Positions 1-45,670 of a DNA stretch of 45,816 bases are shown here, one piece after another. Position numbers and translations under genes: made by a program. The notes under the pieces are model-generated. The model made no database searches. It was not told the DNA's origin and saw nothing but the letters and a program-made list of their open reading frames with translations. The stretch is from Kudoa neothunni. Lineage: Eukaryota; Animalia; Cnidaria. Every line of letters begins with the position of its first letter. The first letter of the stretch is position 1. The DNA lies in the NCBI GenBank assembly GCA_964304625.1, contig OZ199838.1, positions 854,793 to 900,608 of the forward strand, given 5' to 3'.

Positions 1-13
1 ATGTGATCTTATT

Positions 14-790
14 GTGAGACACGCAATAAGTTTATTATTAATGTTAGTCCGTGTAAAATTGTTATATATCAATATTAAAAAATCTAAATAGTAATATTAA
101 ACAACTAATAGGTTAATAACAAAGAGAAAAACAATAAAATTCAATGTTTATAGAAAAAAAGATGGAGATTGTACGTGTATTCGACCGCGTTCGGATGAAA
201 AATTCTTACATTTTAGATGTTATTATTTTATTTTATTGTGGACAATATTGAAAAAAATAAATTCGAAAAACATTTGTAATGGGCGTTTTTAGGTGTTGCT
301 CTGGCGTATTCATATACAGTAATGGACTTGTCGTACGTACATTAGCTATTTTATATATTTAAAGGTTCTCTCGTATTTAAAATGATTTAAAAAATGATTC
401 AATCTTATTATTACTCATTTAAATAATTTATAAGTATAATTAGTACGAAAAAAGAATAATAAACGGTCCCGTGAGGATCGGTCATACGTATTTTTGCTTT
501 AACCATGTGATTAAATTAAGTGTTTTCTTTCTTTTTATACCACAGTTAAACTATTAATAAGTTTTTACAGTTACATCAATGTGGTAGATAGTAGAAAAAT
601 GACGAATAAACATAGACACATGTTATAGACACAGTAGTATGGTTTATAATTATGTCTTCTGTAATTCATTGAAATATCAATGGAGCAATGTCAGTCCCTC
701 CCAATAATTTAGAAGCGGATGATTATTTTATTTATTAAAATTTGAACTTATCAGAGATGGTCTTATTTTATTTGGAGGGGCTTGGTAACT
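14..790 (+). other. Putative micro-exon array (upstream part of the same gene)
   Basis: Regular alternation of AG acceptors and GT donors giving candidate exons of 8-59 nt (92-111, 154-170, 217-275, 320-336, 365-372, 444-470, 521-544) that can be joined in one open frame (NIKQLI EKKMEI MLLFYFIVDNIEKNKFEKH FNGLVV RSL YEKRIINGP CFLSFYTT). There is some freedom in site choice. Confidence 0.35.
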
Positions 791-969
791 ATTATAAACA
801 TTATCGTTTAAAAAAGGGCGATTTGAAGCCCGATTTTATTTCAGATGTTTATTTATTTTTACATCGTAATTTTAAACAACAAAGAATAATTGGCTTTTTA
901 TTAATCTTTAAATTATAGCTAGTTTCGTGTTTTGATAATTTTTGCGCGCTTGCGGAAAAAAATCATAGT

Positions 970-1192
970 ACATACTCTCCAGCCGAGACCTGTAGTGAGT
1001 AAAACTTCGCCATCCCCAATGGGATAACGTACGACCGATTCATTCTCGTATTAACCGTAGCGCGTAATCGTGCGCCAGCGCTGTGGTCCATAATCAAGTA
1101 ATAAGGTCCCACCACTTTTAGGTTTGAGGGTCATGGGTTCGACCCTCGTCCGCTACACCGCATACTTTACCACTATCCCCGCAAACGAGGCG
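970..1192 (+). ncRNA. GC-rich tRNA-like / SINE-like block
   Basis: GC-rich island in AT-rich DNA; B-box-like GGTTCGACC at 1136-1144; GTAGCG (1057) can pair with CGCTAC (1151-1156) like an acceptor stem; no clean cloverleaf. Confidence 0.3.
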
Positions 1193-1193
1193 C

Positions 1194-1985
1194 ATGAATG
1201 GTTTCGTTTGTGGTAATAAATATGAACAAAACTTCGTGCACTCATTACACGAACAAGCATTGTCAGGTACCAATCTTACTATACATCTAAAAAGTTGGTC
1301 ATACTATTCGAAATTGTGTAAAAAAGAAACTATTATTGATTCGACATTTTTCAATAATATGAAAATTAAACTCCTTGATTTTTTGGAATTATAATATTAA
1401 TGGTTGATGGGTATAAAAACCGTTAACCTGGGCACAATTGCCGGATATTCTTCTCATACAATATTTGATTATTTTCACCATCTTCGGCAGTTGGTAGCGG
1501 ATAGTTTAAATTTTTGAGGGCATAGTTATTAAAGGAAAAAATATAGTTGTAGAGCTCGACTAGTCCAAATTTGGAAAGTTGTAGCATAACTGAGGGCATG
1601 ACGTTAATGGAGCCTGTGTTCATGGAGGTATAGAATGGACATCAGAACGAAAGATGTTTTTGATAGAGGTTCCTGACAGAACTGCTCTGCTCGAACTCAT
1701 CCAAAAAATCAAAACTTACATGTATCCTGGCTTTATTATCGTAACTGATTGCTTCAGAAGTTATGGAACACTACATAATTTCTACACTCACATCATTGTG
1801 AATCACAGTATAGAATATGTGGATAATATCACAAGAGCTCATACAAACACCAATATAGATACCTGGAGTGCTAAAAAATATAAAATATCACCAAGGAACA
1901 GGAGATTTTCGGTTAATGAAGGTGGTTCTGTCAGTGCGGATGGTAAAAACGAATTTCTTGGTTAATTTCAATGGAGAAGGAAAAA
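1194..1985 (+). mobile_element. Merlin/ISXO2 (IS1595-like) DDE transposase remnant
   Basis: Fragments across frames: STFFNNMKIKLLDFL, VELD*SKFGK, HGGIE, FLIEVPDRTA, YPGFIIVTDCFRSY, HIIVNHSIEYVDNITRAHTNTNIDTW. These match DDE_Tnp_IS1595 motifs, with stops and frameshifts. Confidence 0.8.
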
Positions 1986-4039
1986 CAACCACAATTCATG
2001 AAATGGCTGTATACGCTAGTTAGAAAATTTTTAGTTTACTATCAATTAGATTTGTGTTTTATTGTGTTTTTCATAGTTGTATATTTCTGCCGCGTGAATT
2101 CTTTGTTAAATGTGAATTTAGGGGGTTTTATCATAGATCAGCACGTTATTAAATCAAGTAAGTGTTAGATGAGCACACAATATTAATGTGTATGTTTACT
2201 CGGCTTATTTCTATAATAAAGGCGTTTTTAGTCTTAATTATAGAATATAATTTAACTTTCGTTGTGATTATTAATTACTTTATTTATTGAATGGTATTCG
2301 GTCTATTAAATCGATATAATGATATTCTAATACTTATTTGATATTGATAATAAAGTTTTCAGAGAAGATTATTATTTATCTGTCTATGAGAAAGATGTTT
2401 TTATAAAGGCTATTAACTAACAGGTGACAAAATTATTCCTTTTGATTTCATAAAAATTTATATGGTAGTTAACTTGCCGTGTATAATATTTTAATTATAG
2501 GTAGTAGGGGTTCCTAATTTTCCTTGTTTAACCATATAATTATGTAATATGACAGACAAAAAGACCCATTTCATCCTAATTACTTGTTCTAAATGTTTTC
2601 AGTTTATGCTTCAATTTATTTTAGCCATTTTCTCCAAGTTCCTAATGTAAACATTAAGAATGCTCTAATTTTATATGTCTAGCCAAAATAACTTCAATTG
2701 GTAGTATAATTATATATTACTATAATTTTTTTGTTTTATTTATAGTAATAAACTTTTTCATATGCGAGATACAAGTAATCAACCTAAAAGTATGGTATTA
2801 AAATAAAAATCAAATAAATAGGATTACTGTGGTTAACTAATTAAGGACCGGTTTAGTGAGATAATTTTATAATTCGCTAAGCTGTGTATATTATGAAGAG
2901 TATATCGTTGGTTAGAATAGTATTCTTGGTTATATTATGTGTAATGCACTCTCTTGCCAGAAAATACCCCATCAAGAATGTTATTAATCGATTTAAATGA
3001 AAAGTTAATATTATTTTAGAAAACTTTGTACCTGTTTGATCGAGCAAACAATATGTGGGGTGTGTTTGTTAACAGTTTGGTTGGCGAAGATGGGGATGTA
3101 ACTCCAATCAGTACAACTGAAACTTTGTCACAAGTGAAATATTATTGTCCTGGAAGTAAAAAACTAAGTAAATGGTTAGTAAATAAATAAATATATTAGT
3201 TTTTGATAATTACAAATCGATACTGCATTTCACGATAGAATGTATTAACAACATTATTAACCACTCAAACCTAAACAAAGAAGAAAAGACAAAATTATCG
3301 GTGCAATTTTTTGGAACTCAATCATTTAATTATATTAGGTAAACTATAGATATAACTTTTATATTTAGATTGAAAAAATATCCAACCTTTTATAGACGCG
3401 ATATAAATATACACAGTAACTTGTGAGTCGTGCGCAAACATATTTTATATAATATATCTCGATAAAACAAGCATTAATCAGTAGCTAGAATATTTAATTT
3501 CTTCACCATCAACTATGTGACAATCATAACTAACTGACTCAATTTGAAGTAGGAAACATTAATTTATCAACAGTTTTTTTGCATTCTAAATGTCATATGC
3601 AACTAATTTTTTTCGTAACATCGAAGATTATGACTAGTACGAGAGTATTTTATTCGTAATTTTAAAGATTATGGCATTTTCTTCAACAGATGTTAAAATA
3701 TTTTTAACTATATATCAAAAATTGAGTTTATAAATTATTATCAAGAGCAATGAATAAATCAATTTTTAAATTTAAAATAATGAATGTGGTTGATTTAAAA
3801 AAATGATCTGTCTTGAATAATTTTATAATCATACTGACTAGTTGCTTTAACATTATAACGATTATTCTGTTCCAAATTAAGAATATCCCTCAAATGGATA
3901 AAATATAGATATTAATCAACAAATAGAAGAGTGGATTAAACTGATGAGAGCGACAACGATATAGGATTCTTTAAGACGTTTCTTAATCAAAACCTGTATC
4001 TGCTAGCAGCTACTTTGTTTGACTCTATATATAAAAAGA

Positions 4040-4125
4040 ATTATCATTGAACATAATATATTTTGGGTGAATCTTCAAATTTAGATCGTGTTGCATTAAA
4101 ATTATTCCAAATATTCAACTAAACA
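4040..4125 (+). mobile_element. Possible hAT C-terminal dimerization-domain remnant
   Basis: Frameshifted FWVN / NLDRVALKLFQIF resembles the hATC FW...L..LA.KLL.IP motif; short and degenerate. Confidence 0.25.
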
Positions 4126-4900
4126 AATATGCTAATTTGTCAAAATATAATTTAATTGTTGTTAGTGATAATTCATTATTTTATTTTTTTCATTTAGCGA
4201 TCGACTATTTCTCTGGTATCTCAACTGCGCAATAACCATGACTGGATTTAATATTTAATTTGGGGGAATTTTTAATGTAAAATATTCATGTAGTTAGTAA
4301 TACCATCTCTAAGCAATATCACTGCACCATTGGAATTTATTTATGTGCTTTATAATATAAAACTTAATCAATATAATAATAACAACATACAATTTAGCCA
4401 CAAATTAATTGAATTGGCGCTAATGGTAAATCACAAAAATTATTCCATGTAGATAACTCATCGTAGCGACACAATATAAATAATGAATTAATTTAGAAAA
4501 TTATATATTTCTTCAACTTTATATTTTAATTTGATTATATCATTAAATGGATGTATAATAAAATGGATAGTTAATTAAATAATAATATTTTATATTGGAA
4601 AAAATCACCTCAAATGAATAATCAAATTTAATTTTTTATAATAAAAATATGAAGAAATATAAAAAATTATAAAATTGCAGCTCTAATAGTCTTTATATTG
4701 TAGTTGACGCTGTCTGTTGTTTACAAATGGTTTTGCTTTATAAATCTCGCACAATACGTAAAGATAAAATCTTTTAAATTTTCATTAGACAACATTTTGT
4801 GCTTAGAAATATATCCTCTAGTGAATTCAATTTTTTTATTCTATTTGAGTCTTTTTTAAAAAGTATATTAGTTTTATATAGGATTAATTCGCCTTTTTAA

Positions 4901-6272
4901 CCTTCCAAGTATAAATGGAGTCTTTTGAACCACAGCCGACATTAATTATCAATTTTCTACCACATTGACTTTTGAGGAATTTTTGGCAGTCTGTCAACTC
5001 TTCTAAAATGCTCCGTAGTAGAATTACACTAATTAAAAAAATTTTTCATCACCTGGAAAAAAAGTTAACGCATAAACACCCTCCAAATAAAAACTAAAGT
5101 TTGGGGTCTTTTGGACCTCATAATTTTTTTTCATCTATTTATCCAATATATTGATTTAAATGTTTGTGAAAACTTTGAAAAAATTTTATCGAGTAAATAT
5201 ACTTTTATTGCATAAATATCATATCTTAATCTATATTGCGCATGCACCACAATTAATTTAAATTATGTGTTCAAGTGATCCTAATAGTGATTACTCCGAT
5301 ATCGAATTTTCATTTTCATTTTCAAATTCATTTTATGATTATTTATCGTTAGAAAAATTTTATATTTATACAGATATACAACTTAACTCGTTAATACACA
5401 AGAACGGGGTGTTACGGTCAATGAACCCCCGTCGTTAGCATATACAACAAGTGTTGTAAATATTATGAATAATCGCCATGGTGTCCCTCCGTATTTATCA
5501 CAAAATACAATTGATACTTTCGGAATAATGTTTAGTTCTATTATATACGTCATTATTTTAAAATATATTAGTGCATGGGTGGAAAAATTTTTGGTGATAA
5601 ATGGATCGAATTGGATGGGTTCATTAGCTGTTTATTTCTGATGGGATATCACAGGGATAATCGAGAATCGGTTAACGAGATATTTGGGCTAGAAGAAGCA
5701 TAGATATATCGTGATTTAGTTTCATTGCATAAATTTCTCCAAATAATACGAGTTTCACATTTTGATGGTATGGAAAATATTGAGGTAACAAAATAATCCG
5801 GAGATTATTGTCATGTTGGTGAACTACCGCATATTTAGTTAGATTTTTTACGCGTTGTTTCACCCCTAATCAACATTTCAAGCCTATATATGTTACCAGT
5901 TTTATGCAATAATCTATGCAATAGCCTTTGCCAGATTTATGATACTTTTGATCGCTTTAAGCGCAAATTAAATAAAGAATTAATTTTAATAAATGAGCCG
6001 AATTTTGAGTTATGTTTATGGAAAATATGCGATCTCAAAAATAATACATACACATACGCTGTGGTTAAAATATTTCTTTATCATTCGCACATGCGCACAC
6101 AATAAAACATGATGTCATTTATGAAATTACTGAATATATAATCGATCGAATATTTGGAAAACTGCTAAAAATACATATTATAATTTTTCCAAATATTTTA
6201 TCAAATAAAAACGTGGGGTCTTTAGGACCCTAATTAATTTGGAAGGAGTAAATTTTCAAGTGGCTTAGAAGA
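4901..6272 (+). mobile_element. piggyBac deletion derivative
   Basis: TTAA at 4897-4900 and 6273-6276; degenerate termini CCTTCCAAG / CTTAGAAGA; subterminal GGGGTC..GACC motifs near 4917, 5103 and 6215; transposase traces KWIELDGFISCLFLMG and SLHKFLQIIRVSHFD. Confidence 0.65.
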
Positions 6273-6605
6273 TTAATTGAATGAACTCTCAAATTAAAAA
6301 ATCAAAAGATAATTTTAAATCTCTCAGAAAAATAAAATTTTGATAAAAATGGAATGTGAAATTAAGCATGTTTTAATTATATATGATTATTTTTAGTGTC
6401 TAAAGTGTAGCTTTTGTTTATTATCCTTAAAATATATTGTATATCGAAAAATTACCTAAGACCGATTTATTATTGGATCCTTTGAAAATTCTAAAAGGTT
6501 TAAAATTTATAAAATTATCCAACGATAAAAAAGATTTATTACTAAGATTAAAAAATGTGAGAGGATTAATGACTATAAAGCATACAGTGCGTTTTTGCTT
6601 TTAGG

Positions 6606-7304
6606 CAGTGTTTCCCAACCTTTTTACTTTTCGCCATATTTTTCTTGAAAAAGTTCTGTAACTATCTGTAGCAAACGTATTGATATATAACATAAATTAT
6701 TTATAGAATTGAATAAAACTCCCTATCACATTAATATTAAAAGCACTTAATGTATATTTTTTTCTCAATTAAAATTAAAGTGTATTCAATAGATTCTTAT
6801 TTAACTTAACGATGGGTCATAAAAATTAACATCTTTAAGGATCTATTCCATCAATAACAGCGTTGAATGAAACTCAAGGTAATCCAATCTTCAATTTGGA
6901 AAGACTCTCATGTATATGGGGCTAATGAACGGAAAATAAATACTATAAATACCAAATTAATCAATATTATATTAGGCTTAATCAAAAAAAGATATAAACG
7001 ATTTTAAAAAACACTTGATTGAGGACTCAAACCATTCTAATTCTATTCGGATGAAGGACACTAAATATTATTAATAATTTTTATATAGTATCCATTGATG
7101 ATTGTAGTTTTTATAATGTAAATTGTCACATAAAATAAACCATATCTCAAATTTCGATATTAATTTTAATGTACGAAATAATGTCCAATTATCTCACTAT
7201 TATCCATGTAACATCAATATTTCAAGATATTCCACAGTTCAGTATACTTTCAAAAATATTCATTCCCCCAATATTTTTTCACGCCCCATCGGTGGGACAC
7301 ATTG
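6606..7304. mobile_element. Non-autonomous hAT (Charlie/Buster-like) element
   Basis: TIR CAGTGTTTCCCAACC / GGTGGGACACATTG; 8-bp TSD CTTTTAGG (6598-6605) vs CTTTAAGG (7305-7312). Confidence 0.65.
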
Positions 7305-9979
7305 CTTTAAGGGCATTATTACTTTTTTGTATGAAGTAGGAAATTACAATCTTAAATTAATATTATAAGAATCTCCACAATAAAATCACATTTTATACAT
7401 TTTAAGGATATTAAACGATTTAAAAATTAATTTATTCATGTATTTAATATATTACAATTCTATATATTATATAAATTAGTATCATTCATTACAAACAGGA
7501 ATTAAACATTTAATTAGAAGACAATAATATATTTAATAGTAATTATTTAAAAAAACCCAACAATAAGAAACCCATATGAAATTAGATAATCGGAATGTAA
7601 GACATTGAGGATTATGTTGGTTTACCTTTTTATATAAACCCTGAAGATAAACCTATTAATAACTATATCGTATATTAATATGTATTACATTTTATAAATA
7701 ATAAAATTTAAATAAAAACTGTTCGGTATACATTAAATATAATCTTTTTAGGGTCAAATTTTAAAACGAAACAGTCATGAAGTGAGCAACAAGCATTAGT
7801 TCATCATTATTTTATGATTTTATAGTTTAATATCATGAGTAATAATCCGGATATATTTCAAAAAAATATAATATTAAATTTAAGTGTATTGAATCAAACT
7901 ATAAGTTATTGGAAAAATAAAAGAAATGTGCAATATCTGTATGCGGCACGAGCGTTGTCTACTGTAGCTATATTATTTTTGCCAAACCAGTTATATTTTT
8001 TATTTTATTTATTTCAATACATAATATTAAATTGGTTGTATATATCATATTATATATGGAAATCCTGGAATTTAAAAATTCATAGAAACGTTAAATTATA
8101 TTTATTTATACTTTAATAAGAAATTTAATCTAAAACACATCTTTATAGCAATATTAATACGAAAAAGTTTTCTCATTATTGAAATAAAAAATATACTATC
8201 CAAAATAACACCACAAATATAAAATGAAGGTTAATTGGTATAAGGAATAAGTTGATTAAAATTGTGTTTTAATATATATTTTTTAACGCAAGATAATTTT
8301 ATTATTTGAATTATACCAGATGTAATTAACATAATGATTTATAATGCATAATTTCCTTTAAGTTTTCTATTGTTTAATATATATTAAATAATACTTATGA
8401 CAATTATTTTAGAAATAAAGACTTGCACTTTTTCGAAAATTTTGAATTGAGGTTTAAACATATATTTGTCAAAATTTATGTATCCAATAACCCATAAAAA
8501 CAAATTTATCTTTTTCAAACCACTGGAAATGGTATACCCAATGTTAGCATACTTGAATAATCATAAACTCTATCAGGTAATACACAAAAATAAATTATTA
8601 TTTAATAATATCTGAATATTTCTAGAAAAATCAAGACATTGGATTAATTTATATTCATTCCTTAAACTTTATTATGTTTTATTATACAAATGATGATTAT
8701 AACGAACCAAACGATTATATTGGCAACATTAGACGGTACCTAACAAGAAAGAAAAATTTATTGTTATCAATTTTCCTTGCACTGGTCCGTACTTTGCTGA
8801 ATTAATGATTATCAGGGAATATTATACCGTATGATTTGATTATTAAATTATTTTTTTACGATATATGATTATAATTTATAAAATGAATATCTCAAATATA
8901 AAATATTCATATTTATAATAAAAATAACATTTAATCCAAAATTAGAATAATTATCTAAGAAACTATTTAATTAATATTTTTGTTGTCTCTTATTCATCAT
9001 GACTAAAGATAATTATTAGTACTATTGTGTTTATTCAGAAATATGTTTTATTATTAATATATAAATATTTTTTAATAGACATAATATTATTTAGATGAGT
9101 TCGCTAAAGGGTACAAATATATACATAGATAATGTTTGTTCAAGAATTGGATTTCAAGATGAAACTCGAACCTGGATTGTTATTTATATGTGGTGTGTGA
9201 AGTTGGACAGATGTATTCTGGGAAAACGATATTAATTCGAAAAAAATTTGATTTTTACGAATGTTTAAATCTTTTAAAGAAAATTTTTAAAATCCCACCA
9301 AAAATAACGATTTTATATCTCTTGAGAAAAATTTTCTTAGATGGTGGAATATACCCAAAATTTTACCTTAAACCCAATCTGAAGACTTTATTGTATAATA
9401 ATCAATAATCACGGTTATGATGTATTAATTTACTTTTTAGTCTTACAGCATGTTCTTCAATAAAAGATTTCAGTTAAGGAAAAGGAAATCTGAATGATTT
9501 AAGGAAGGATGTTTGGTTAATATGTAAGAGACACACTTTTCACTAAAGTATAATTTTTTATGATTTTTTTGTAATTTTATAATGTATTTTAAATTTATAA
9601 ACATAAAAATTCACCTCTTAATCGTATTAATATTCTTAATTATACATTTAAGAATATAGAAATTCAATTATTGATTTTAATAATATTATTAATTTTACAA
9701 TTGATGATTATTTTGAACATTAAATCGAAATAGCAAAAAAATAAATCATAAGAATTGCAAAATTTTCGTTTTCTCAACTCTACTAATTATGATTTTAAAT
9801 TCATTTTTTAAGTCAAAAGGATTTACCTAAATATACGTAACTATGTGTCAGTTATAACTATTTTCAACAAAATTTGTTTAATGATGACTTTGTTATGACT
9901 AGATATTTATAAGGGTTGGGAAAAATCATATATCATTGTTTTTTGGGTTAAAATTAATAAATAGTGAATTTTTAATCCC

Positions 9980-10222
9980 AAATTAGGCGGGAGTCTGTTG
10001 CCATAATAAAATTTAATCCTAAATGGCATTCCCGCGTGAGTAATAAAGATATTTATTCTCAGCAACTCTTATTTACAAGCTGTTTACAGATTCAATTTTT
10101 CTGAACCTGCTATATTCAGTTATTTCTGTTCTTGATAGCCAAAAGGCTGGCAAGAAATAATTAAATATAATCATAGCTATCGTCACCCGAATTTTATTTA
10201 CCACACCACTAGCCACATCCTT
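9980..10222 (+). repeat. Unclassified interspersed repeat, copy 1 (homolog at 28325-28565)
   Basis: Colinear similarity by eye: AAAATTTAATCCTAA..TCTCAGCAACTC..TTTACAAG.TGTTTA.AGATT..TCACC.GAAT. Confidence 0.6.
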
Positions 10223-10445
10223 AGAATTATTCTATTTATGCAGAAATAAATTAATCCCAATATTCATCACATATTTAATATTATTTTAGTTTAAGTCAAT
10301 ATACTATGGTAAAATTAATTTAAAAATTATTTTTTCCCCTGTTTTGAAATGTGTATTTTACTTTTTGAGATTATGGTATCTTATATAAATAGGAATTATT
10401 TTCAAATACAAAATTTCAAACTTAATTGTAGGATATTCAAGTTAA

Positions 10446-10694
10446 CCCTTAAAGGATAACCTTCAGTTCGATGCGCCCATCTTTATATTATTTTGTTTAT
10501 AAATTTCGTTGTTATGCATGTTATATTTTGTGTATATTCGTCAGAATTTGATCTACATTTTTAAAAAAGCATTATCTACCGACCGTCATAATAAAATAAG
10601 TTAATGGTCTAGCAAATTACACAAATTATAAACAGGTTTTACAACAAAATAATAGGGAGGTGGACGCGCGAATCCAATGGTTAGCCGTTAAGGG
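10446..10694. mobile_element. piggyBac-type MITE (249 bp)
   Basis: TTAA on both sides (10442-10445, 10695-10698); TIR CCCTTAAAGGATAACC vs reverse complement CCCTTAACGGCTAACC (14/16). Confidence 0.8.
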
Positions 10695-10905
10695 TTAATA
10701 ATTTTTGTTTAATATTACGTTGCATTGATATATGTTACTTAACATTGTTATTATATGGTTGTGTCTAGTGAATAAATTTGTTATGATACGGAAAATGATT
10801 ATAATCACATATATATATCTTTGAATAAACTGAGAACTATTGTATTTGGTAATCATTCTTGTTATCCTCCAAAAATTCTGAAGTTGGAAGTTGGATTTGG
10901 ATTAA

Positions 10906-12690
10906 CCTTCTAAATAACTCGGGGTCTTTTGGACCCCAAAGTAGTTTTAAATTAATTATACAATGGCAAACCGATAATACGTAATTCCCTCAGCACCCAT
11001 TGAAAGAAATATGGATTAAACGTTGCCGCCAATATTACGCACTTAAATGCACACGCAGTTATTATTTTGTTGTGTTTCTTTATTTTTCAGTGTGGTCATT
11101 ATACTTTTTATTTAATTAGAATAACAAACAACATTATCAAAATTATTTTGGCGAGAAATAATCCGCAATTTTTGTTTTTAATCAGATTTATTGATAAAAT
11201 TATTTATATCCTTTTACATTGGAATAAAATTTAGTGAATGGTCAGTTCTATCAAATTATAAATACTATATTTATTTCTAATTCATTTTATAGACGCAATA
11301 TGAACATTTTTTTAATATTTTCACCCTAAAATCTTTATTTATTTGCGTCTTTAACATCCTTTAATTGGCATCTAACATAGCCTTGAAATAAAATTTATTC
11401 TATTTTCATTCGAATGGAAATGATCATTTTTCGATCGATGTCTCAAAAGGAGTTTTCTGTTCTATCAAACATTCAACCATCAGAGTTACAATTTATTCAT
11501 CGTTTCCAATAAAATCAATTTTACCTTCTCGGTCCGAAGTGGGGTCATTTGTGACCTCACATGAACTATTTTGCTTTTAACTCCAAGAATCCTAATCTCA
11601 TTAATGAATACATTTAGACATACCTAGATGGAACTATGTTTTATAATTGAATTAATGTTTATTCCTTTTAAGCATTTAATAATATAGCTATGCCACATAT
11701 TTTATGTGGAAAAATTATTTTTTGCATTATTTTTAAACAAAAAAAGTATGATCGTATCAATTTTTATTTATGCTCTTAAGGAATGGAATTAGATTTTGAT
11801 CAACATATTTACATAACTCATAAAAATGCAGTTTTTTTCTAGCTAAGCTGTAATGAGATTAATATTCCTTCTGTGTTAGTGAAACGTAATTTTCTTAATT
11901 TGTTTATATTATCTTGTCTTTTAAAAATAATATTTACTTATTACCTAACAATATGATCTCGAATAATACATACAACACTATCGAATAGCGTATACAAAAT
12001 AATCTTATCTCAAATTCCGGTGATGATTCTGATTATAAAATATCAGAATCTGAAAATTTTCTATAAAGATGATTTTGATTCTTGAAGTAAAAAATATCTT
12101 AACTGATGTTTTCATTTCCCAAGGACCAAGGGTGAGAAGCCCACATTCTCTTGTTCTAATTGCGGTGAATTTTTTTTCTCAAATCATGTTAAATAAAAAT
12201 AAGTTATCTCATGTAACATGTGTCTCGAATAGTTTTCTCATATAAATTTATTATTATTTTTAATGTTAAATTTTTTTGTTGTAGAATTTATATTAGTTTA
12301 TACTATTTCAATTAAAAAAACATCAATTTTTCTTCTAAATTCTAAAAAAAGGGGATAGAGTCGATGACGGATGGTTCGTACTTTCGAAAATATGTAAAAA
12401 TTTGAAATTTGAAAGAAAATGAATTATTAACTTTAAACTCAAAATACACATTAGAATAAAAAAATTAAGTTGAAAAAATATTAGAAATCTAATAATTAAA
12501 TTGTTGTAAGTTTCCCTTATTTTTATAGATTGACGTGTGGTTCATAATTATTCGGGTGAATATAAACTCAGACTTAGGTTGTGCTAACTTTTGATTGGAG
12601 GTAAAACTTCAAAATAATGTTAGACCTACTTCTAAAAAATAAAAATATAATTAATTATTTCGACAGCCAGTCAAAAGCAAAGGTTAAAAT
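10906..12690 (+). mobile_element. Cluster of piggyBac deletion derivatives (boundaries uncertain)
   Basis: TTAA-CCTTCT start with GGGGTCTTTTGGACCCC at 10921; second similar start near 11525; cysteine-rich C-terminal remnant KPTFSCSNCGEFFFSNH..SCNMCLE near 12137-12232. Confidence 0.45.
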
Positions 12691-14929
12691 CAAGAACTAC
12701 AAAACTTTTAGTGCAACATCTTATCAATATTGGTTTTGTTTTAAATATAAAGGATGATATAATTCGCATATATAAGCACAATTTAACCTAAGAAAAATAC
12801 AACATACTTAATAAAACAATAGAGTAATGATATTTTGTTTTTAGGCAAAACTAGGTGTCATTTAAAATTGGAATCTTCAAATATTAAACGAATTTTTCTT
12901 CACCAAAACACTCCAAATGCTCTCCGACCCACAGATCAGAGTATAATGTATTCTGTTAAGTTCCAATATAAAGTATATACGACAAAACGCCACGTTTCTT
13001 CTATCAAAGCTTCGATGGAACCCACATTTCCTAATATTTTGAATGCACTTTTTTGATCGCGGATTCTTGAGATTCGATGACTTAACCAACTATTTTTAAT
13101 TGTTTTATTATGATGAAATCTAATCGTAAAAAATATTTCAGTTATTACTGATAATTTAGATATAAACGATGACTCAAATTAGAATACACATTTTCCTTAA
13201 GAGATACATGAAATGAACAATGATGAAATTAAATCGAACGTTGTGGATATCGGAAATGACAATTTTTCCGATGAACATGAAAATATCATATAGTTAGCGG
13301 ATATCCTGACGATGTTACCAAAATTTAAATCATAACGGATATTTATTAGTTTAAATATAAAAAAATAACATTAATATCTAAAACTGACCTATTTTACTTA
13401 AAAAACATAAGCAATACCTTATCGAGCATGGTTCGAAAAATACAAATATACATTTGGATATCTCAGACCTGTTATGTTTAATCTGCGAGATACTCTTATT
13501 ATATTAAATTACATTTTTTTAATTATTATATCCTACAAATTATTACATCGTTTATTATTTTTTAATATAATAACAAATTAACAATGTCATTAAGATATAA
13601 TTTTGTAGATGGGTAATATATACATTAATGGAAACACATAACCTCTCATCAATATAAATATAGTAATGTCTTGATATTCAGCACTAAATCGGGACCTGAG
13701 CCTTTTACTGCCCAATCCAATAATCCAATATCGAGGTTTTGCACAAATGCGACTAGAGTATCTTTTTAATTTTTTAACGTAAAAATGTTATATCAAGTTT
13801 GTATTATATAATTAAAGATGTGAAAGGCATCTATATAACAATATTCAAACATTTCCTCATTTTTTGCGATCTTTTGATGAAGAATTTTTAAAATATCAAG
13901 AAAATAGTTGAAATCATCCAAACATTTTTTGGTCGTTAATATTCAACAGAAAATTCACAAATTTCTATAAAACAGGGTTTCTCCTTAAATTCACAAATGA
14001 CAATATATGAAAATTTTATCACTACAAATTTAGCACTCTATAATTCTATTACAGGTTTTTGGATTATTTCATTACCCCTTAACTCAACTCCTTTATATCA
14101 TATGTTCGTTGAGTGCACCTTTCTACTACAAGAATGATATCACCGAGATTTAATGTTTTCTTTTTCATATCTACTTTTTATCTAATAAAAATAATAATGA
14201 TTGGATTATCTAATCATTAACAATATTATCATCAACTTTCCTCACTTCTACGCGAAGAGTTAATTATAGAACAACAGAAATTATTAAAACTTATAAGGAA
14301 ACCCTTTTTTTCACTTATACCAATGATTTAAGATTATCAGCAAAAAATCTTGCCTTCTCAGTGAAAAAAAACTCTAGAATATTCGTTTTTTTGGTGTTCT
14401 GACACAATCCGACCATATAATTCAATTTAAAGTTCGATGTATTTTTTATTTGTAATTCCTTTACTGAGAGTAACAACGATGGAAATCATTATATAAGATC
14501 TATCGGATATAATTATATTCAGAGAAGAATAACTAAATTTAATTTGAATAAAATTCACAATAACATAATCCATGATATTCTATGGCGCTATAAAGTAAAG
14601 TTTGGCATTTTAATCATAATATTGAATAGTTTCAACTTTTTAGAAAAATTTCTTTCTTCTTCCACAATATCGAACATTCGAATGTGTAATTTAGTGGATT
14701 AATCGGATTAAAATTTGAAGTAATTTTTCTATAGCAAGACCTTGAATTTTACAAAAATACATTTTTACGTATTATTACATATTTTCTGGTATAAAGCTAG
14801 AGTATACGACTATATAAATCGAAAGGGTTACAATGATAGTTCCAGAAATTTGAAAAAAATTTCGACTACCCTACATAGAACCTCGTAAAATCGAGACTTT
14901 ACTATATAATCTAAATTCATATTTATTTA

Positions 14930-16762
14930 TTAAACGTTTCAAATATCCTTACGTCAGAAAGAACAAGACCAGTGATAAATAAAAAATACGTAATGATGGA
15001 TGAATAACTAACGTTGGTATTTTATTATGCAATTGCAACAAACAATTTCAAAGTGATTATTACAACAATATTTTGAACAGCAAAAACATATTGATTTTTT
15101 TTTCTATCTGAATCTTGCAAACATAGGTTGTACTTTTTTTAACTTTAGAAACGAATCTTTCATTATTCCAAATAAGAGAATCATCGTTGAGAAATGGTTT
15201 CACTAATAAATCCGCTAACTCTTCTAGATCTTTGACTCTCGAGATATTAGGTTTATTAAATATAGTTTTATACAAGTAAAACGAGTTGACCAAACTTAAG
15301 TAAATCATATTGTAAACAATAACCATCGGCCTTTTTTTGGTATATCGTTTTACACTCGAGATAGATAGAATACAATCCAACATATCTATCACACCTTTGG
15401 TTTTGTTATAATCAATTATAACCTCAGGTTTTTCAATATGATCCGGATGCAATCTAACATTGTTTGATGAAGTAGCCAACTAAATGACAGCCTTGTTTTT
15501 TTGGCACGTAGGATAACATAATCTTTTTCTTATGATAAACAAAAATCAAATTAAAGACTTCCCTCATTTTGTTCAACTCCATAATCGGCGGAATGTCCCT
15601 TTTGTTGTGACGAATAGTTCCAAGCATTGTTAATCCATGGTAAAGAAATTATCACATACGATATTTCTACCAGATCGTTTTAAATATGACGATAACTCTA
15701 AGAAAATCTTTTCTCCCACATTCTTAGTAATTTCATTGGTAGTTTTACCCAGATAGATAGAATTATTATGGGTATTATTGGTGTGTTGATCGGTTAATAG
15801 AAAAAACTTTATGCCATAGACTGCAGGCTTAGATGGCATATACTTTTTAAATGGACACCTGCCACGAAATGCTACCAGCCGCTCATCAACAGTAAGACTT
15901 TCAGAGAGAGTCAAACACATTGGAAGAATATTTTTCCATTCATTAAATTAGTCAGTTATTGGGAAAAACTTATTATCTTCACGTCATACTGCACTGGTCT
16001 AAAAAAAATCAAAATTAATAATTCTATTAATTTGTGTGAATCTTTCTAGCGACATTATTTTTTGAAGAATATCTCGTGCTTAATTCAAGCTCCACAATTT
16101 TTTGAGGGCTTCCATCTTGGATTTAAATATATATAAAAGAATTCACATGTATGCTTTCTTTTCCATTAACGTTAATTCATACCATTTATTTCTGTAATTG
16201 AAAGACCAAAATTTATTTGTGCTAGTAATAATGATTTTATAAAATTCGTCATTAAAAAATAACAAAAAACAATCTATAAAGTAACAGATTCTTGACGATG
16301 CGAATGCAGTTATTTCCCGGGGCTTTGTTTAAAACTTTTTCCTATGTTGTTCTAATATTTGAGGGAATATCAGGAGACCATACAACATCGTTTTTATCTT
16401 CTTACATATTAATTGAATCAAACTCATCAGCGATATCATAACTACTAGACGAAAAATTATCTTCCAAATTATCGTCAATTTCACTGAAATTTTTTCTAAT
16501 AATGCTGTATTTAATTTTATATTTGTTTTAATGAAATAATAACATGGGATCAGTCTGGACCCCCAAAACGGCTAGATGTATAAAAAATATTTTACGAGTT
16601 CGTATTAAATTAATTTTTAGTTATAAAACCTTTTTTTATTCTTTGTGAGATATCCGAAGAATAACGCCAGATTTTATTAAATTGATCTTTTTCAACAAAC
16701 TGTAAATTGTCCCAAAATTTGGCTTTGGGTCTAGTGGACCCAAAGCCAAATTCGGAGAGTGG
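14930..16762 (-). mobile_element. piggyBac element with decayed transposase
   Basis: ORFs 15630-15920 (LTVDERLVAFRGRCPFKKYMPSKPAVYGIK..IVCDNFFT) and 15060-15479 (KPEVIIDYNKTKGVID) match DDE_Tnp_1_7; 5' end at TTAA 16763-16766; 3' end not resolved. Confidence 0.9.
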
Positions 16763-16769
16763 TTAATCT

Positions 16770-17114
16770 GTGGTGCATAAACTTTTTTGGACGTGGCAAA
16801 AATAATGTTTAGACAAAATTTTAACGATGTTAAATTAATTCAGGAACGCAAAAATACACGATATTGACCATAAATTATTTAGCGTTGATTCTAGGCCACT
16901 AAATTTTAAAATGAACGCCAGGATTGGTACACTCCTTCACAGAAATGATCGTAATTTAAATTTCATAATCCAAATCGTAAAAGTATGATTCTTAAAATAT
17001 TTTAGTTATTTGTTTATATGGGTTAAATTGAAATTTCATTATATTTTTTGAATATTATTAAGTAACGTCTCCATGCAAAATCTTCCAGAAGCAACGCTGG
17101 TTTATTTGTACTAG
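16770..17114 (+). mobile_element. Helitron 3' portion
   Basis: Ends in hairpin-like CCAGAAGCAACGCTGG then CTAG|T (17111-17115); colinear with 24080-24405. Confidence 0.65.
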
Positions 17115-17901
17115 TATATTACAAATTAGGCACATTTTAATAAAAATTAATCGTTTATTTTACTAATTAATAATTTAAAATCTTATCATATTATTTCTGT
17201 TACATCATATAACCAAACCTTAATCATTCTTTTCTTTCACATGAAATTAAAGAGATATCCTTTCTATTTAATATTTTATTTTTTTAGTATTTGGTGAAAT
17301 TAAGCAAGGTTATTTTATACATATCTAGTGAAATAGGTTGAAATAGATAAGCTTTGATTAATACTCCTATACTGATTAAAAATATTTTCACTCATAATTC
17401 AAATTAATTCATCCTTTATTTAATTAAAATCAATGCTATTCTCCATTTCTCAAGATGTATCGTAGATCTATTTGAAATTATTAACGATTAATAGATTATA
17501 TAATGTCACCGGAAATGTTTACTGTTAGTTTCATGGCCGAGCTACATAATATTGGTATTAACGTAGTGTATACGCTTTTATTTTATTCAATTTCTATATT
17601 GACAAAACCAATATCGTTATATCAGTTATAGCCACCATTTGAGGTATCGTCCTGATGGGCTAAATTGGTAATATCTCTCAAAATTTTTACCATATTTTTA
17701 ATGAATATTTTTTTCATTATTAATTTATATATTTTAATAATTAAAAAAATAACTATTCATTATACCAAAAATTAGAAACAAATTCAATCATTATAACAAT
17801 AAAAAAGTTCGGATGGTTAACCGATCCTAGTGTTAACACATTAACACATTTAAGTCTTTGAGCCAATTTATTCGTATTTAAATTTTTGGCTTGAAAAAAT
17901 A

Positions 17902-19118
17902 CAGTGGGCGAGAGGTAATACTTACTTTGGAGCGCATGCTTTTATTTAAAATTCAATTATTTTTTATTATTTTTGTAATAATTTCCTTTAGAGAATGTCT
18001 ATTATTTTTATTGGTTTCTTATATTTCATTTATATGTTAAATAAATCTTCTTCTAACTTTCAAGCTTATTTTTAGACATAAATGGAACTATTTTTTGTTG
18101 AATAGTCTCATATACTTGAGACAGTTTAATAGTTTTTGTGATTTAGCTATATCTTCGTCGACAGATTCTGAATATGATAAGCTAATGTCTCCAGGATAAC
18201 TGGAGAAATTTCTTTCATTTTTTCGTCGTTTCTGCGTCGATATCCACAAATTCCGAACGTGTCACTTAAATAATGTTTTAGGTAATTGAAAATCGTCATG
18301 TTCAACCGAAGAATCTCTTTCACTTCTTTTAATATTTTTTATATAGAAAATTACTTTAAAATGGAATCATAATTTTATCTTAGTTAAAATTCAAATCCAT
18401 CTTGAATTTATAATTATTCAGGGTAATTTATAAACTTACATTCATCAACAATTTTTGGATCTTTATATAATTTAAATCTATGCAGATTAAACCGTTTATA
18501 AAATTTTGAAATCAACCATAGCTAACACCATCGACATTATCCATAATTTCCTTCACCATTTCATTATGTTTAAAAATAATTTCCTACGAGGAATAACTCT
18601 GAAATATATTATCTTATTCAAGTTATCCGTTTGTATATTTTTCGTCGACTCATCGTTTTTTCAGTGGTTTAATATTTACAGTTACATTTTCATATAATTC
18701 GGCAATTTGAAATTTCATGGATAGGTTACTATTTAAAATTAATATGATTATAACAACATAATTTTTAATGGTGTAGCTTTATTTTTTTTATATCAACATA
18801 AAATATTTTATTTCTCTGTATTTTGTATTTATTATAAGCATATCATGAAGATTTATATCAACCATACATAAAAATTGAACATCAGCTTCGCGCGATTTTA
18901 AAGTCAGTTTCTGGGAAAAAGATGCGTATTACTCAACAATTCATAAAAATTCAATATTTTATTGATATTTTTCCTAGAAAATATTTTTTGGGTGGAAAAA
19001 CTCAAATTAATTAAGTTTATAAACGTCAACTGAAGTAATGAGTTCAACATGTAGTAAATTCTATATGAATAAGCAAAAGTACGAATTAGCCGTATTGCGT
19101 ATTACCCGTCACCTATTG
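17902..19118 (-). mobile_element. pogo/Tigger remnant
   Basis: TA-CAGTGGGCGAGAGGTAATAC left end vs degenerate inverted copy at about 19098-19118; minus-strand SYG*FQNF resembles the CENP-B-type HTH SxGW..F motif. Confidence 0.5.
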
Positions 19119-19121
19119 GAT

Positions 19122-19149
19122 ATCTATATATATATATATATATATATAT
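19122..19149. repeat. (TA)n microsatellite
   Basis: Visible dinucleotide run next to the Tigger end. Confidence 0.9.
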
Positions 19150-19771
19150 CTTAAGAGCATGAATTATGCTAAGGTGATAAGATATCAACATGTTAGATTT
19201 AAAATATTGTTTTAATCTATATATTATAATGTTATTTATGAAAAATAAATATATTATATTATTTTTTATTAAATTTTTTAAACAAAATACATAATTGTTT
19301 GAATAGTATTTGTTATATCATATAACTATTTGGATAATTAAAAGATAAGAGAAAATCATTGTTCCACCCACGCAAGAGTGCGTGTTTAATTTTTAATATT
19401 CTATTATAAACACTTTTACGTAAAAATTACACTCATAGATTATAAGAAAATAGTTTTCAATAAATATAATTTAAATTATATAGAAATAAACAACATTTAT
19501 GCACAAATGATTTCAAAAATTTTTCATTTTTGATTGTATGAAATTTTTCCGTACAATGTCATATGCGTCATTCTTAAGATGTGATAATATTTAAGAGAGA
19601 ACTAAATCGTTTTCCAAATAGAATTTTATAAGTTCACTTTTTGAATGAGTAATCCTTTTGAAATTCATAACAGGATTATTCTCAGATTTATGTTCAAGCA
19701 CTTTCTCACCATGATTAAATAAATCTTGGAAATTATCTTTATTATTTATTCGATATCAAATGTAAGTTTAA

Positions 19772-20712
19772 CCTTCGGAAAGTGCAACTCGAAAAACTTA
19801 CGCGTGTGCCGAAGCGGGGACCTATGGTACCCGACCCCAGAGGTTTTTCAACTTAATTCACTCGCAATGATTAAAAAATTTGTTTTATGTGGTTATCATT
19901 TGATTTGAAATAAAAGTAATTGCCCAGAATGTAAAAATATTAAGTCAACTAAGAAAAAAATACAAACAATTTGTAACCGTCACTTTTAAGATAAAAAGCG
20001 TTAATAACGAAGAAATTCCTCAAAAATATAGGTTATGTTTGTATAAAGCCATTAAGTAACTATTGGAAAATTCAAGGTTGATATTCAAGCGAATTTATCA
20101 TTTGAAAGGAACAGCCAACAAAGATAACAGAAAATTGTCGTGTATCTCATTTTCCGACCGTGGTATTAAATTGTAGGAATATTTCCCACCCCTTAAAAAA
20201 CTACCTTTTCAGTTATAATTTTTATTCTATGGTATAAATCATGATTGACATAAAAAGAAAAACCCGGTTCGAACAAAATTAAATATTATTCGACCTATAC
20301 TTTCAAAATTAATATATTACCAAGAGCGTCCGTGTCATTATAATCTCAGGATAATCTCCAAGCTTTATGGATTCTTGTGGTAGAAAATAAAATCAAAACT
20401 TAGTCATACTCTTATTGCTTTTATTCATTTTTAAATTAATTTTTAACTAAAATTAAATAAATAATAAATATAAGAGATTCAAAGGACTTTTAACACTAAA
20501 TAATATTGGTTCAGTCTTGAAAAAGTAGTCTATTATATAATATCCTTAAGCAAATAATTTTTTGTTAGTTTAGTTTAAATTTTATTTGATATTAAAAGAT
20601 TACATGGAAATCTATAGAGAAAATAAAACGGTAAAATTAGAAATTTTGAAGAATAAAATAATCAGGGTTCCCAAAATAACTCGTCCATCCCGTAAGCCTT
20701 ATGGCATAAGGA
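19772..20712 (-). mobile_element. Probable piggyBac derivative
   Basis: TTAA-CCTTC end at 19768-19776 with a GGGGACC..GACCCC subterminal motif; TTAA at 20713; the two termini match poorly. Confidence 0.3.
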
Positions 20713-21815
20713 TTAATCAAAAGTTGACTGACAAGGTGTAAAATGAACATAACGTGATATACATTTTCTCACTCTGCCTATTTGAAATCAGTTAATTTCA
20801 GTTAAGACATTAAATATTCATGTATATCTAATATTTAAATCCAATCGATTATTTGAAATTTAAATATAAAAATTTTTAAAAATTATGAATAATCGGTTGC
20901 TTCCTATTAAATTATTAATATAATTAAAAAATTAATTATGAAACCATCATAATTTTTACATTAAACCCTCTTTCATATTGCTTGAATAAATTTTATATGG
21001 ATTATCGTTGTTTAGCACCTGAGTAGTTGGAATCTCGCTTTTGATACATGCTTTAATAACATCTATAATTATTTTTTATATGAAAAGCTATTTACTAAGA
21101 TAAGTTTTGTATCAAACGTAAAGGTAATATTTATATTTAATTAATAAAATAAATTTTGTTCAGAAGGAATTATTTCCATGGATTTTGGGTGCTATTGAAT
21201 TCCAACAACAAAAATTTAAAGGTTACTTATATAATATAACTATTTGAAATATTATGCTATTTTTAGACTTAATTACCCCTGTGACAACAACTACATTCAC
21301 CACAACTACCTTGTACGTAATATTTTATGTTTATCTTACCGCTTTAGTCATTGTCATATCTAATAATAGGACCATCGAAACAATATCTGTCATTTCCACT
21401 GATACCACCATCACGGAAACTACGATTATTTCAACAACAACAACAACAACAACAACTACTACTACTACCCTGACTGATACATATATTTATGATGCGATAT
21501 TTCCAGAGGTGTTACTATCTAGTGTGACTCTTTCAACATCAACACACAAGAATATACACGTCCGTATATTCCAAAGTAAATTATATTAATTATTATAATA
21601 TTATTATTTTTTAAAGTATTAATGATATCATGCATTATTATAACAATCTTGTTTGTGCCAATTATGGCTTTTTGTTTCTGGAAATTACTCCGAAAATATA
21701 AACGAAGAGAAAAATGGTTCTTAAAACACCCAAAATTAAAAGAAAGTAGTTATTAGCTCGTATAAACTATGATGATATCGTGATGATTTTTGTTAAGTTT
21801 GTTTTTTGTTATGTA

Positions 21816-45200: not shown

Positions 45201-45670
45201 CCACCGTCAAACCTTTGCTCGTGTTCTTGTTGATTGTTAAACGTAACAATACAAGAATATACGACGTGGATGAGTCGGCTGATCGAAAACTTTCCAACCC
45301 CAAACCCGGCACGGTGGTCGACAGCACGTTAACTTATAGATCCGCCGAATGTTGTCCTACGTTCTACTTGATCAGTCAACACTTCAACCAAGGAACTATT
45401 ACTCCTACGTGCTATCGAGTTCTCTTCAACAACAGCGGTTTAGCAATGAATCAAATTCAACTTTTCACCTACAAGTGCACTTACCTATACTACAACTGGC
45501 CAGGTACTGTGTCTGTTCCTGCTCCATGCCAGGTATGATTTTCGTTGTATTAATTTTGCAATGACCTATCCATTTCACTTTAGTACGCCCACAAAGCCGC
45601 TTATCTTACTGGTCAGTCACTCATGAAACAGGCTCACAATGTTCTTGCCGACAGATTATACTATCTTTAA
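42256..45670 (+). CDS. piwi: PIWI-clade Argonaute, about 16 coding exons
   Basis: MKPNQVKRFGRG start; N domain (LQCNY, VFDGNVLY); IWPGF; PAZ (VITRYNNKSYRIDDIDF, LIPELCYMTG); QINCKLGGELW, GIDVYH, VVFRDGVG, YYNWPGTVSVPAPCQYAHK and C-terminal LYYL-stop. Confidence 0.97.

What the first reader, a model, noticed from the sequence alone, without database searches (positions are those of the whole stretch)
1..21756. Hidden ~22-kb gene: micro-exon N-terminus + apyrase pseudo-enzyme + mucin stalk + TM, a candidate variable surface/decoy protein
Seen: scattered exons splice into a protein colinear with the intact NTPDase 8 kb downstream, but ACR1 DAGS reads DRAN, ACR2 reads GTQS and ACR4 DIGG reads YIHS. 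The ACR3 Glu (ExxY), several Cys and ACR5 (WILG) persist. A Thr-rich stalk, TM and basic tail follow. Established: the DxG motifs of ACR1/ACR4 bind nucleotide phosphates in GDA1/CD39 enzymes, and parasites use ecto-apyrases against host purinergic signalling. Inference: a catalytically dead NTPDase fold lifted on a mucin stalk and capped with a micro-exon region. I know no described protein with this architecture; it is the best candidate for a new system here.
Basis: partly seen in the sequence, partly recalled or inferred. Interest (0 to 1): 0.8.

Follow-up and report, generated by a model that had tools for sequence, protein, structure and literature searches.

The report
Broken copy of dead-apyrase surface gene
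The stretch holds one, probably inactivated, copy of a large undescribed family of parasite membrane proteins that descend from an ATP-splitting enzyme, have lost its catalytic loops and sit on a sugar-bearing stalk; two intact sister genes lie just downstream.

Summary
Window 2893-21756 (+) holds an 11-exon, 18.9-kb locus ("A"): signal peptide, NTPDase-like domain with degenerate ACR1-4 and a kept ACR5 (WILG), Thr-rich stalk, TM helix and basic tail.

Two paralogs, B and C, lie 27 and 56 kb downstream. They have the same exons, phases and architecture, and open frames of 547 and 630 codons. The motif-intact NTPDase at 29289-31057 (-) shares all eight domain introns with them, in the same order and phase.

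Two claims fail.
- **N-terminus:** it is an ordinary signal-peptide exon (2893-2979), not micro-exons.
- **Splicing of A:** it does not splice into one protein. Exons 8413-9547 carry five frameshifts and at least two in-frame stops. A is most likely a pseudogene; less likely, this is a low-coverage assembly stretch.

A one-step profile of the Cys-rich exon finds 39 loci in this 40-Mb genome, very probably the fish parasite Kudoa neothunni. Its best PDB match is rat NTPDase1, but not at a significant E-value.

This scan had already flagged the same family elsewhere in this genome. I found no paper describing it. No RNA evidence was obtainable. The joined product was neither searched nor folded.

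The parts
2893..2979 (+). Exon a0: start codon and hydrophobic signal peptide
   Evidence: ATG at 2893, GT donor after 2979, 40-nt intron. Same position as the first coding exon of C and of the intact NTPDase.
3020..3155 (+). Exon a1: ACR1-like strand and loop (DRAN 3038-3049)
   Evidence: AG/GT boundaries, open frame. Matches B at E 0.0018 (genome search) and C at E 0.005 (local tblastn). Ends at the same Cys-x-x-Gly position and in phase 1 as B and C.
3200..3338 (+). Exon a2: ACR2-like (GTQS 3313-3324)
   Evidence: Open frame. Matches B at E 6e-8. Ends in phase 2, nine codons after the motif's first Gly, as in the intact NTPDase.
3339..8412 (+). 5.1-kb intron holding high-copy repeats
   Evidence: The corresponding intron is 263-333 nt in B and C. 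Logan depth is 17-67 at 5100-6300 and 6900-7100, against 2-5 elsewhere.
8413..8576 (+). Exon a4: ACR3-like, Glu kept; frame broken near 8450
   Evidence: The exon is entered in the same phase as B and C. The conserved part then lies in another frame, and the phase-tracked reading meets a stop.
8626..8828 (+). Exon a5: ACR4-like (YIHS 8650-8661); frame broken near 8733
   Evidence: Matches to B and C lie in frame 0 up to 8721 and in frame 2 from 8733. B and C are uninterrupted here.
9095..9392 (+). Exon a6: Cys-rich middle exon; three frame changes (about 9150, 9200, 9295) and an in-frame stop at 9369-9371
   Evidence: Three-frame view against the continuous 300-303-nt exons of B and C. The B+C profile matches it at E 5.8e-6 with stops inside.
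9441..9547 (+). Exon a7: shortened, with an in-frame stop at 9495-9497; donor at 9523 or 9547
   Evidence: Starts like B and C, 48 nt after a6. Length is 83 or 107 nt, against 105 and 108.
15063..15947 (-). piggyBac-type transposase remnants inside the 11.5-kb intron (9524-21015)
   Evidence: PF13843 at E 1.7e-16 and 6.5e-4, on two separate open frames.
21016..21123 (+). Exon a8: Cys-Phe exon that precedes ACR5
   Evidence: Matches B. AG/GT boundaries, phase 0, same position as in the intact NTPDase.
21164..21221 (+). Exon a9: ACR5 (WILG 21179-21190)
   Evidence: 61% identical to the B exon. The acceptor lies five codons before the Trp, as in B, C and the intact NTPDase.
21267..21575 (+). Exon a10: Thr-rich stalk (34% Thr, 8% Ser)
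   Evidence: Open frame in phase with a9 and a11. Its last part matches B and C. Holds an (ACA)8 run at 21432-21456.
21617..21756 (+). Exon a11: TM helix, basic tail, stop codon
   Evidence: Matches the last exons of B and C, at 29-35% identity.
29289..31057 (-). Neighbouring motif-intact NTPDase (N): 9 exons, 463 codons, used as comparator
   Evidence: DAGS 30901-30915 and DIGG 30293-30307. All boundaries are AG/GT, the phases are consistent and introns are 25-83 nt. Weak PF01150 matches on two exons.

Best explanation
Window 2893-21756 (+) is one locus (A) of a lineage-specific gene family, very probably of the myxozoan fish parasite Kudoa neothunni. The family arose by duplication of an ecto-NTPDase (GDA1/CD39) gene. 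Its products are type I membrane proteins made of a signal peptide, an NTPDase-derived ectodomain, a Thr/Ser-rich stalk inserted between ACR5 and the anchor, one TM helix and a short basic cytoplasmic tail. The two phosphate-binding loops (ACR1, ACR4) and the ACR2 motif of the ectodomain are replaced, while the ACR3 Glu, three cysteines and the ACR5 Trp-x-Leu-Gly are kept. From the established role of the DxG loops in NTPDases, I infer that such proteins cannot hydrolyse nucleotides and instead use the scaffold as a displayed binding or coat module. Copy A itself is most likely a unitary pseudogene. Its 5' and 3' exons are open, but the four central exons (8413-9547) carry five frameshifts and at least two stop codons, and two introns have grown to 5.1 and 11.5 kb through repeat and transposon insertions. 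The sister genes B and C are intact and carry the function. Shown here: homology among A, B and C; shared gene structure with the intact neighbour; motif states; lesions in A; family size. Inferred: NTPDase fold, loss of catalysis, glycosylated stalk, surface display, function.
For: 1. Paralogs. A's exons match B and C colinearly on the same strand.
2. Intact sisters. B (10 exons, 1644 nt) and C (11 exons, 1893 nt) have AG/GT at every boundary, consistent phases and no internal stop. At a stop frequency of 0.074 per codon, chance openness is about 1e-18 and 1e-21.
3. Shared gene structure. The intact NTPDase N and C share eight introns in the same order, with phases 0,1,2,0,0,0,0,0 and similar exon lengths.
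4. Sequence link to NTPDases.
   - Exon-by-exon similarity to N gives Stouffer z of 2.7 (B) and 3.3 (C), against 0 for mismatched exon pairs.
   - A family profile of the Cys-rich exon, built without N, has rat NTPDase1 (3zx0) residues 252-310 as its best match among 177,635 PDB sequences (E 0.55), with the three Cys aligned.
   - One distant member's exon matches PF01150 positions 229-307 at E 1.9e-4.
5. Motif states. ACR1 reads DRAN, DSAD and DTGD in A, B and C, and ACR4 reads YIHS, YIHY and YVHY.
6. Lesions in A.
7. Stalks. They are 102, 60 and 156 residues long with 31-66% Ser+Thr, and C holds an (ACT/AGT)n array.
8. Family size. The profile finds 39 loci at E <= 0.1 on three chromosomes, nearly all open.
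9. Organism. The assembly is 40.26 Mb with a 12.04-Mb second contig, equal to the K. neothunni assembly in PMC12239612.
Against: - No transcript evidence. Three RNA runs gave zero reads on 2900-8899, which is no test.
- No single exon of A, B or C matches PF01150, the PDB or N significantly on its own.
- The mid-exon profile found no true relative among 1.84 billion proteins.
- The fold was not tested.
- All lesions of A lie in one block that coincides with the lowest read-contig depth (0.36-1.15), while about 980 nt of flanking exon have none. This pattern fits a local consensus problem, or continued selection on the flanks, as well as simple decay.
- Splicing across the 5-14-kb introns is unproven in a genome whose median intron is 49 bp.
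Confidence: 0.65

Rival explanations
1. A is an intact third member. On this reading, the five frame changes and the stops are consensus errors, or belong to one haplotype, in a thinly covered stretch of a HiFi assembly built from parasite reads that contaminated a tuna sample.
For: The lesions cluster in 8413-9547, where the depth of run X1 is lowest. In the adjacent 6194-8328, the only long X1 contig differs from the window by seven one-base indels. The source paper stresses low coverage of this parasite. A's other exons are clean.
Against: B, C and N, about 4.9 kb of coding sequence in the same region, have no frame error. The reported assembly QV is 48.5. The stop at 9369-9371 is a base substitution inside a well-aligned stretch, not an indel, and exon a7 is also shortened. 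X1 contigs match 2904-5607 without a single difference.
Confidence: 0.2
2. The locus is not one gene. On this reading, the 3' exons (21016-21756) work apart from the decayed 5' part, for example as a short mucin-like membrane protein started from the ATG at 21254, or they are a leftover of another copy.
For: The 3' exons are lesion-free although the centre is riddled. An ATG at 21254 opens a 111-codon frame that runs into the stalk exon. A hydrophobic stretch follows it.
Against: A, B and C each hold exactly one set of every exon in the same order on one strand. The phases join across the large introns in B and C. No promoter or transcript evidence exists.
Confidence: 0.08
3. One reading: an intact 22-kb gene with a micro-exon N-terminus that encodes a working decoy protein from this very copy.
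Against: An open product requires frame jumps where no GT-AG intron of workable size fits. The micro-exons are superfluous, given the signal-peptide exon shared with B, C and N.
Confidence: 0.04
4. The likeness to NTPDases is convergent or due to chance, and the family is an unrelated Cys-containing membrane protein family.
For: There is no significant exon-level match to PF01150, to PDB NTPDases or to N.
Against: Eight shared intron positions and phases with the neighbouring NTPDase. The top PDB hit of the family profile is NTPDase1 at the right residues. There is a PF01150 hit on a member's exon and a positive summed exon similarity.
Confidence: 0.03

Closest known systems
Ecto-NTPDases of the GDA1/CD39 family (rat NTPDase1, PDB 3zx0; the neighbouring gene at window 29289-31057)
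   Same: Order of the five conserved regions, three conserved cysteines, the ACR5 Trp-x-Leu-Gly, a signal peptide and a C-terminal TM anchor. Eight introns share position and phase with the neighbour.
   Different: The ACR1, ACR2 and ACR4 motif residues are replaced. A Thr/Ser stalk of 60-156 residues on its own exon lies between ACR5 and the TM helix. There is no Pfam-level match for the exons, and the family has about 40 copies.
Other members of the same Kudoa family noted earlier by this scan (s1-690130, s1-701620, s1-701653)
   Same: NTPDase-derived ectodomain without catalytic motifs, membrane anchor, many copies in one genome.
   Different: This copy is frame-broken and stretched by transposon-filled introns. 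It sits in a cluster with a motif-intact NTPDase of identical gene structure, which shows the origin of the family.
Inactive trans-sialidase-like surface proteins of Trypanosoma cruzi (my own knowledge, not tested here)
   Same: A parasite surface family that descends from an enzyme, has lost key catalytic residues, is expanded to many copies that include pseudogenes, and is combined with Thr-rich mucin-type sequence.
   Different: Unrelated fold and organism, GPI anchor instead of a TM helix. A binding function is shown there and only supposed here.

Membership tests
GDA1/CD39 NTPDase | ACR1 phosphate-binding loop (Asp-x-Gly-Ser/Thr) | tested here: not met
   Reads DRAN in A, DSAD in B and DTGD in C, against DAGS in the neighbour N.
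GDA1/CD39 NTPDase | ACR4 phosphate-binding loop (Asp-x-Gly-Gly) | tested here: not met
   Reads YIHS, YIHY and YVHY in A, B and C, against DIGG in N.
GDA1/CD39 NTPDase | ACR2 Gly-rich motif ending in Arg | tested here: not met
   Reads GTQSF, GSFTF and GTYSF, against GTGGLR in N.
GDA1/CD39 NTPDase | ACR3 catalytic Glu | tested here: inconclusive
   A Glu is kept in a conserved Glu-Met stretch in A, B and C. Its equivalence to the catalytic base rests on motif order only.
GDA1/CD39 NTPDase | ACR5 Trp-x-Leu-Gly | tested here: met
   Reads WILG in A and B and WLLG in C, against WTLG in N. The intron lies five codons upstream in all four.
GDA1/CD39 NTPDase | Match to Pfam PF01150 above the cut-off | tested here: not met
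   No exon of A, B or C matches. The joined product was not scanned. A distant member's exon reaches 20.7 bits against a cut-off of 24.9.
GDA1/CD39 NTPDase | Two-lobe ASKHA fold | not testable with these tools
Single exons are not folding units.
GDA1/CD39 NTPDase | Common descent shown by gene structure | tested here: met
   Eight introns share order and phase with N, and the exon lengths are similar.
Mucin-type stalked membrane protein | Ser/Thr-rich segment before a single TM helix | tested here: met
   Ser+Thr makes up 42% (A), 31% (B) and 66% (C) of 60-156 residues, with trinucleotide arrays. O-glycosylation is not testable.
Unitary (non-processed) pseudogene | Frameshifts or stops in exons that are open in paralogs, with introns kept | tested here: met
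   Five frame changes, stops at 9369-9371 and 9495-9497, and splice sites retained. Read-level confirmation is missing.

The most novel reading that the evidence does not exclude
The about 40 dead-apyrase, mucin-stalked membrane proteins form the main variable surface coat of Kudoa. On this reading they are an enzyme-derived antigen or ligand-binding family, which may still bind nucleotides or host molecules. The family turns over by tandem duplication, stalk-repeat expansion, transposon bloating and pseudogenisation, and locus A shows the death step beside the enzyme gene from which the family was born.
Probability: 0.3. Interest if true: 0.75.

Novelty: new variant of a known kind. Interest (0 to 1): 0.5.

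Why it matters
Myxozoans have very small proteomes, about 5,300 predicted proteins here, and almost nothing is known of their surface molecules. A family of about 40 enzyme-derived, catalytically degenerate, stalked membrane proteins would be close to 1% of the genes. It would be a natural candidate for host interaction or immune evasion in parasites that spoil commercial fish.

This locus adds the evolutionary frame. A motif-intact NTPDase with the same exon structure sits in the same cluster. The stalk is an added exon. Copies range from intact to decayed. Genes in a 49-bp-intron genome can be stretched to 20 kb by transposons, so automatic annotation will miss or split them.

Tried and rejected
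- **Direct comparison with N:** tblastn of the intact NTPDase exons against 1-25000 gave nothing significant. A relaxed run gave only noise.
- **Exon-level family and structure searches:**
  - Pfam scans of A, B and C gave no PF01150 match.
  - PDB sequence searches with two-sequence exon profiles returned unrelated top hits.
  - hhalign against N's exons gave no signal.
- **Wider protein searches:**
  - The mid-exon profile against 1.84 billion proteins returned two repeat proteins (LRR, Sel1), both spurious.
  - ESM Atlas gave no usable hit.
  - A word search with the canonical NTPDase ORF gave only four proteins, too few for a profile.
- **Reads and records:**
  - RNA reads gave zero on 2900-8899, which is no test.
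  - Exact-product look-ups of two ORFs that span the lesions found no record.
- **Readings rejected:**
  - A putative extra exon at 3369-3422 was dropped, because B and C splice the ACR2 exon directly to the ACR3 exon in the same phase.
  - Tiny introns as a cure for the frame breaks were rejected. No GT-AG pair fits, and A's exon lengths already equal those of B and C.
Full report
**Setting.** The window is AT-rich (21-34% GC) and comes from contig 1 of a 40.26-Mb, four-contig genome whose second contig is 12.04 Mb. Earlier notes of this scan named the myxozoan Kudoa neothunni. The published assembly of that parasite, recovered from yellowfin tuna data, spans 40.2 Mb with a scaffold N50 of 12.0 Mb. 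It has a median intron of 49 bp, 5,316 predicted proteins, 46% repeats and almost no RNA support (PMC12239612). The sizes match, so I accept the identification as very probable.

**Observation.** The Thr-rich and TM open frames lie at 21.2-21.75 kb. The intact NTPDase is on the minus strand at 29289-31057. I modelled it as nine exons and 463 codons, with AG/GT at every boundary and introns of 25-83 nt. It has a signal peptide, all five conserved regions and a C-terminal TM helix.

**Paralogs.**
- Searching the genome with A's first exons gave colinear matches just beyond the window's end. A search with the ACR5 exon found a match 20 kb further on.
- After fetching the DNA, translated comparison showed three colinear genes on the + strand.
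- In window-continuous coordinates these are A (2893-21756), B (48973-70624) and C (78223-86067).
- Followed by phase, B (1644 nt) and C (1893 nt) are open from ATG to stop, with consensus splice sites throughout. With 0.074 stops per codon in this DNA, that is not chance. The three copies are only 30-36% identical in the exons that are intact in all three, so they are old paralogs kept by selection.
- All three share one plan: signal peptide, degenerate ACR1-ACR4, a Cys-rich middle exon, a Cys-Phe exon, an ACR5 exon, a separate Thr/Ser-rich exon, then a TM-plus-basic-tail exon.
- Stalk lengths are 102, 60 and 156 residues, and C's stalk is built on an (ACT/AGT)n array.

**Link to NTPDases.** Exon by exon, nothing reaches significance against PF01150, PDB sequences or the neighbour N. 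The link rests on four other observations.
- N and C share eight introns in the same order with phases 0,1,2,0,0,0,0,0 and similar exon lengths. The introns sit at the same distances from the motifs: six codons before the ACR4 strand, five before the ACR5 Trp, and phase 2 nine codons into ACR2.
- Summed exon-wise alignment scores to N exceed shuffles, with z of 2.7 and 3.3, while mismatched exon pairs average 0.
- The middle-exon profile of B and C finds more distant members on other chromosomes. One of their exons matches PF01150 positions 229-307 at E 1.9e-4. Three cysteines are invariant across all of them and N.
- A six-member profile without N has rat NTPDase1 as its best hit in the whole PDB sequence set, at the matching residues. 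The E-value of 0.55 is not significant in itself.

I did not search, scan or fold a joined spliced product.

**Copy A.**
- The N-terminus is a plain signal-peptide exon (2893-2979). It has an in-frame stop four codons upstream of its ATG and a 40-nt intron before the ACR1 exon, as in C and N. The micro-exon model (note s1-701716) is therefore unnecessary.
- Exons a0-a2 and a8-a11 are open and in phase.
- The four central exons are not. The frame changes near 8450, 8733, 9150, 9200 and 9295. There are in-frame stops at 9369-9371 and 9495-9497. Exon a7 is shorter than in B and C. No GT-AG pair of workable size can absorb these breaks, and A's exon lengths already equal those of its paralogs.
- Two introns are swollen to 5.1 and 11.5 kb. 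The first holds high-copy repeats and the second holds piggyBac-type transposase remnants. B and C also have introns of 5-14.5 kb with decayed repeats.

**Caveat.** All lesions lie in about 750 nt of exon, and the other 980 nt have none. That block is where the contig depth of the one DNA run I could lay is lowest. The adjacent 2 kb shows seven one-base indel differences between that run's contig and the window. The parasite's coverage was low. Against a consensus artefact stand several points:
- B, C and N are free of errors.
- The reported QV is 48.5.
- The run matches the window perfectly over 2904-5607.
- One lesion is a substitution-type stop.

I put a true pseudogene at about 0.65-0.7 and an artefact or minor haplotype at about 0.2. 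The RNA runs gave no reads at all, which tests nothing.

**Family size and novelty.** The six-member profile finds 39 loci at E <= 0.1 on three chromosomes, nearly all with open frames of about 100 codons. That agrees with the earlier notes of this scan (at least 43 genes), which I thereby tested in part. The mid-exon profile has no true relative among 1.84 billion representative proteins. Paper searches for myxozoan apyrases or NTPDase pseudoenzymes found nothing relevant. Neither the Kudoa genome paper nor the Sphaerospora genome preprint mentions apyrases.

**Mechanism.** It is established knowledge, recalled and not tested here, that the DxG loops of ACR1 and ACR4 hold the nucleotide phosphates and that their mutation abolishes NTPDase activity. 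From this, family members are predicted to be catalytically dead. The signal peptide, stalk, TM helix and short basic tail predict display of the domain on the parasite surface on a probably O-glycosylated spacer. A binding or coat role is the likeliest function. A role in host purinergic signalling would need retained nucleotide binding, which is untested. Locus A contributes no protein if it is broken as assembled.

**Verdict.** This is a real and interesting gene family. It has already been met by this scan elsewhere in the genome, and it is represented here by a probably dead copy beside two live ones and the ancestral-type enzyme.

Noticed in passing
window 29289-31057 (-): Nine-exon NTPDase gene with all five conserved regions intact, a signal peptide and a C-terminal TM helix. 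Its introns are as short as 25 nt. It is probably the active enzyme of this cluster.
   Followed up: yes
L001:3157-4342, L004:8805-9251, L005:4208-4808 (gene B); L002:5016-6152, L006:1495-2860 (gene C): Two intact paralogs of the finding, of 547 and 630 codons, just beyond the window's end. B has introns of 14.5 and 5.0 kb, and C has one of 5.3 kb.
   Followed up: yes
window 25831-27501 (+): piggyBac-type transposase in two long open frames (PF13843 positions 3-154 and 241-348), lying between the finding and the NTPDase. It may be a fairly recent or domesticated copy.
   Followed up: partly
window 1594-1962 (+): Open frame with an ISXO2-like (IS1595-type) transposase domain, E 1.7e-6.
   Followed up: partly
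window 43879-45535 (+): Argonaute/Piwi gene: PAZ fragment at 43879-44259 and a Piwi domain at 44768-45535 (E 1e-59).
   Followed up: partly
window 5100-6300 and 6900-7100: High-copy repeats: the DNA run's contig depth is 17-67, against 2-5 around them.
   Followed up: no
window 6194-8328: The only long contig of DNA run X1 differs from the window by seven one-base indels and one substitution, while 2904-5607 matches perfectly. This may be a second haplotype or a local consensus weakness.
   Followed up: no
window 13655-14028 and 16808-17106: Decayed repeat elements shared with L001:200-560 (inverted) and with B's large intron (L004:5592-5893). They do not lie at corresponding intron positions, so they are mobile elements and not conserved intron sequence.
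   Followed up: no
window 21254-21589 (+): An ATG inside the intron before the stalk exon opens a 111-codon frame that reads into the Thr-rich exon and has a hydrophobic stretch near its start.
   Followed up: no
L010:4302-4595 (-) and 38 further loci listed: Distant family members on contigs 1-3. The L010 exon matches PF01150 weakly, and a linker plus a TM open frame follow it.
   Followed up: partly
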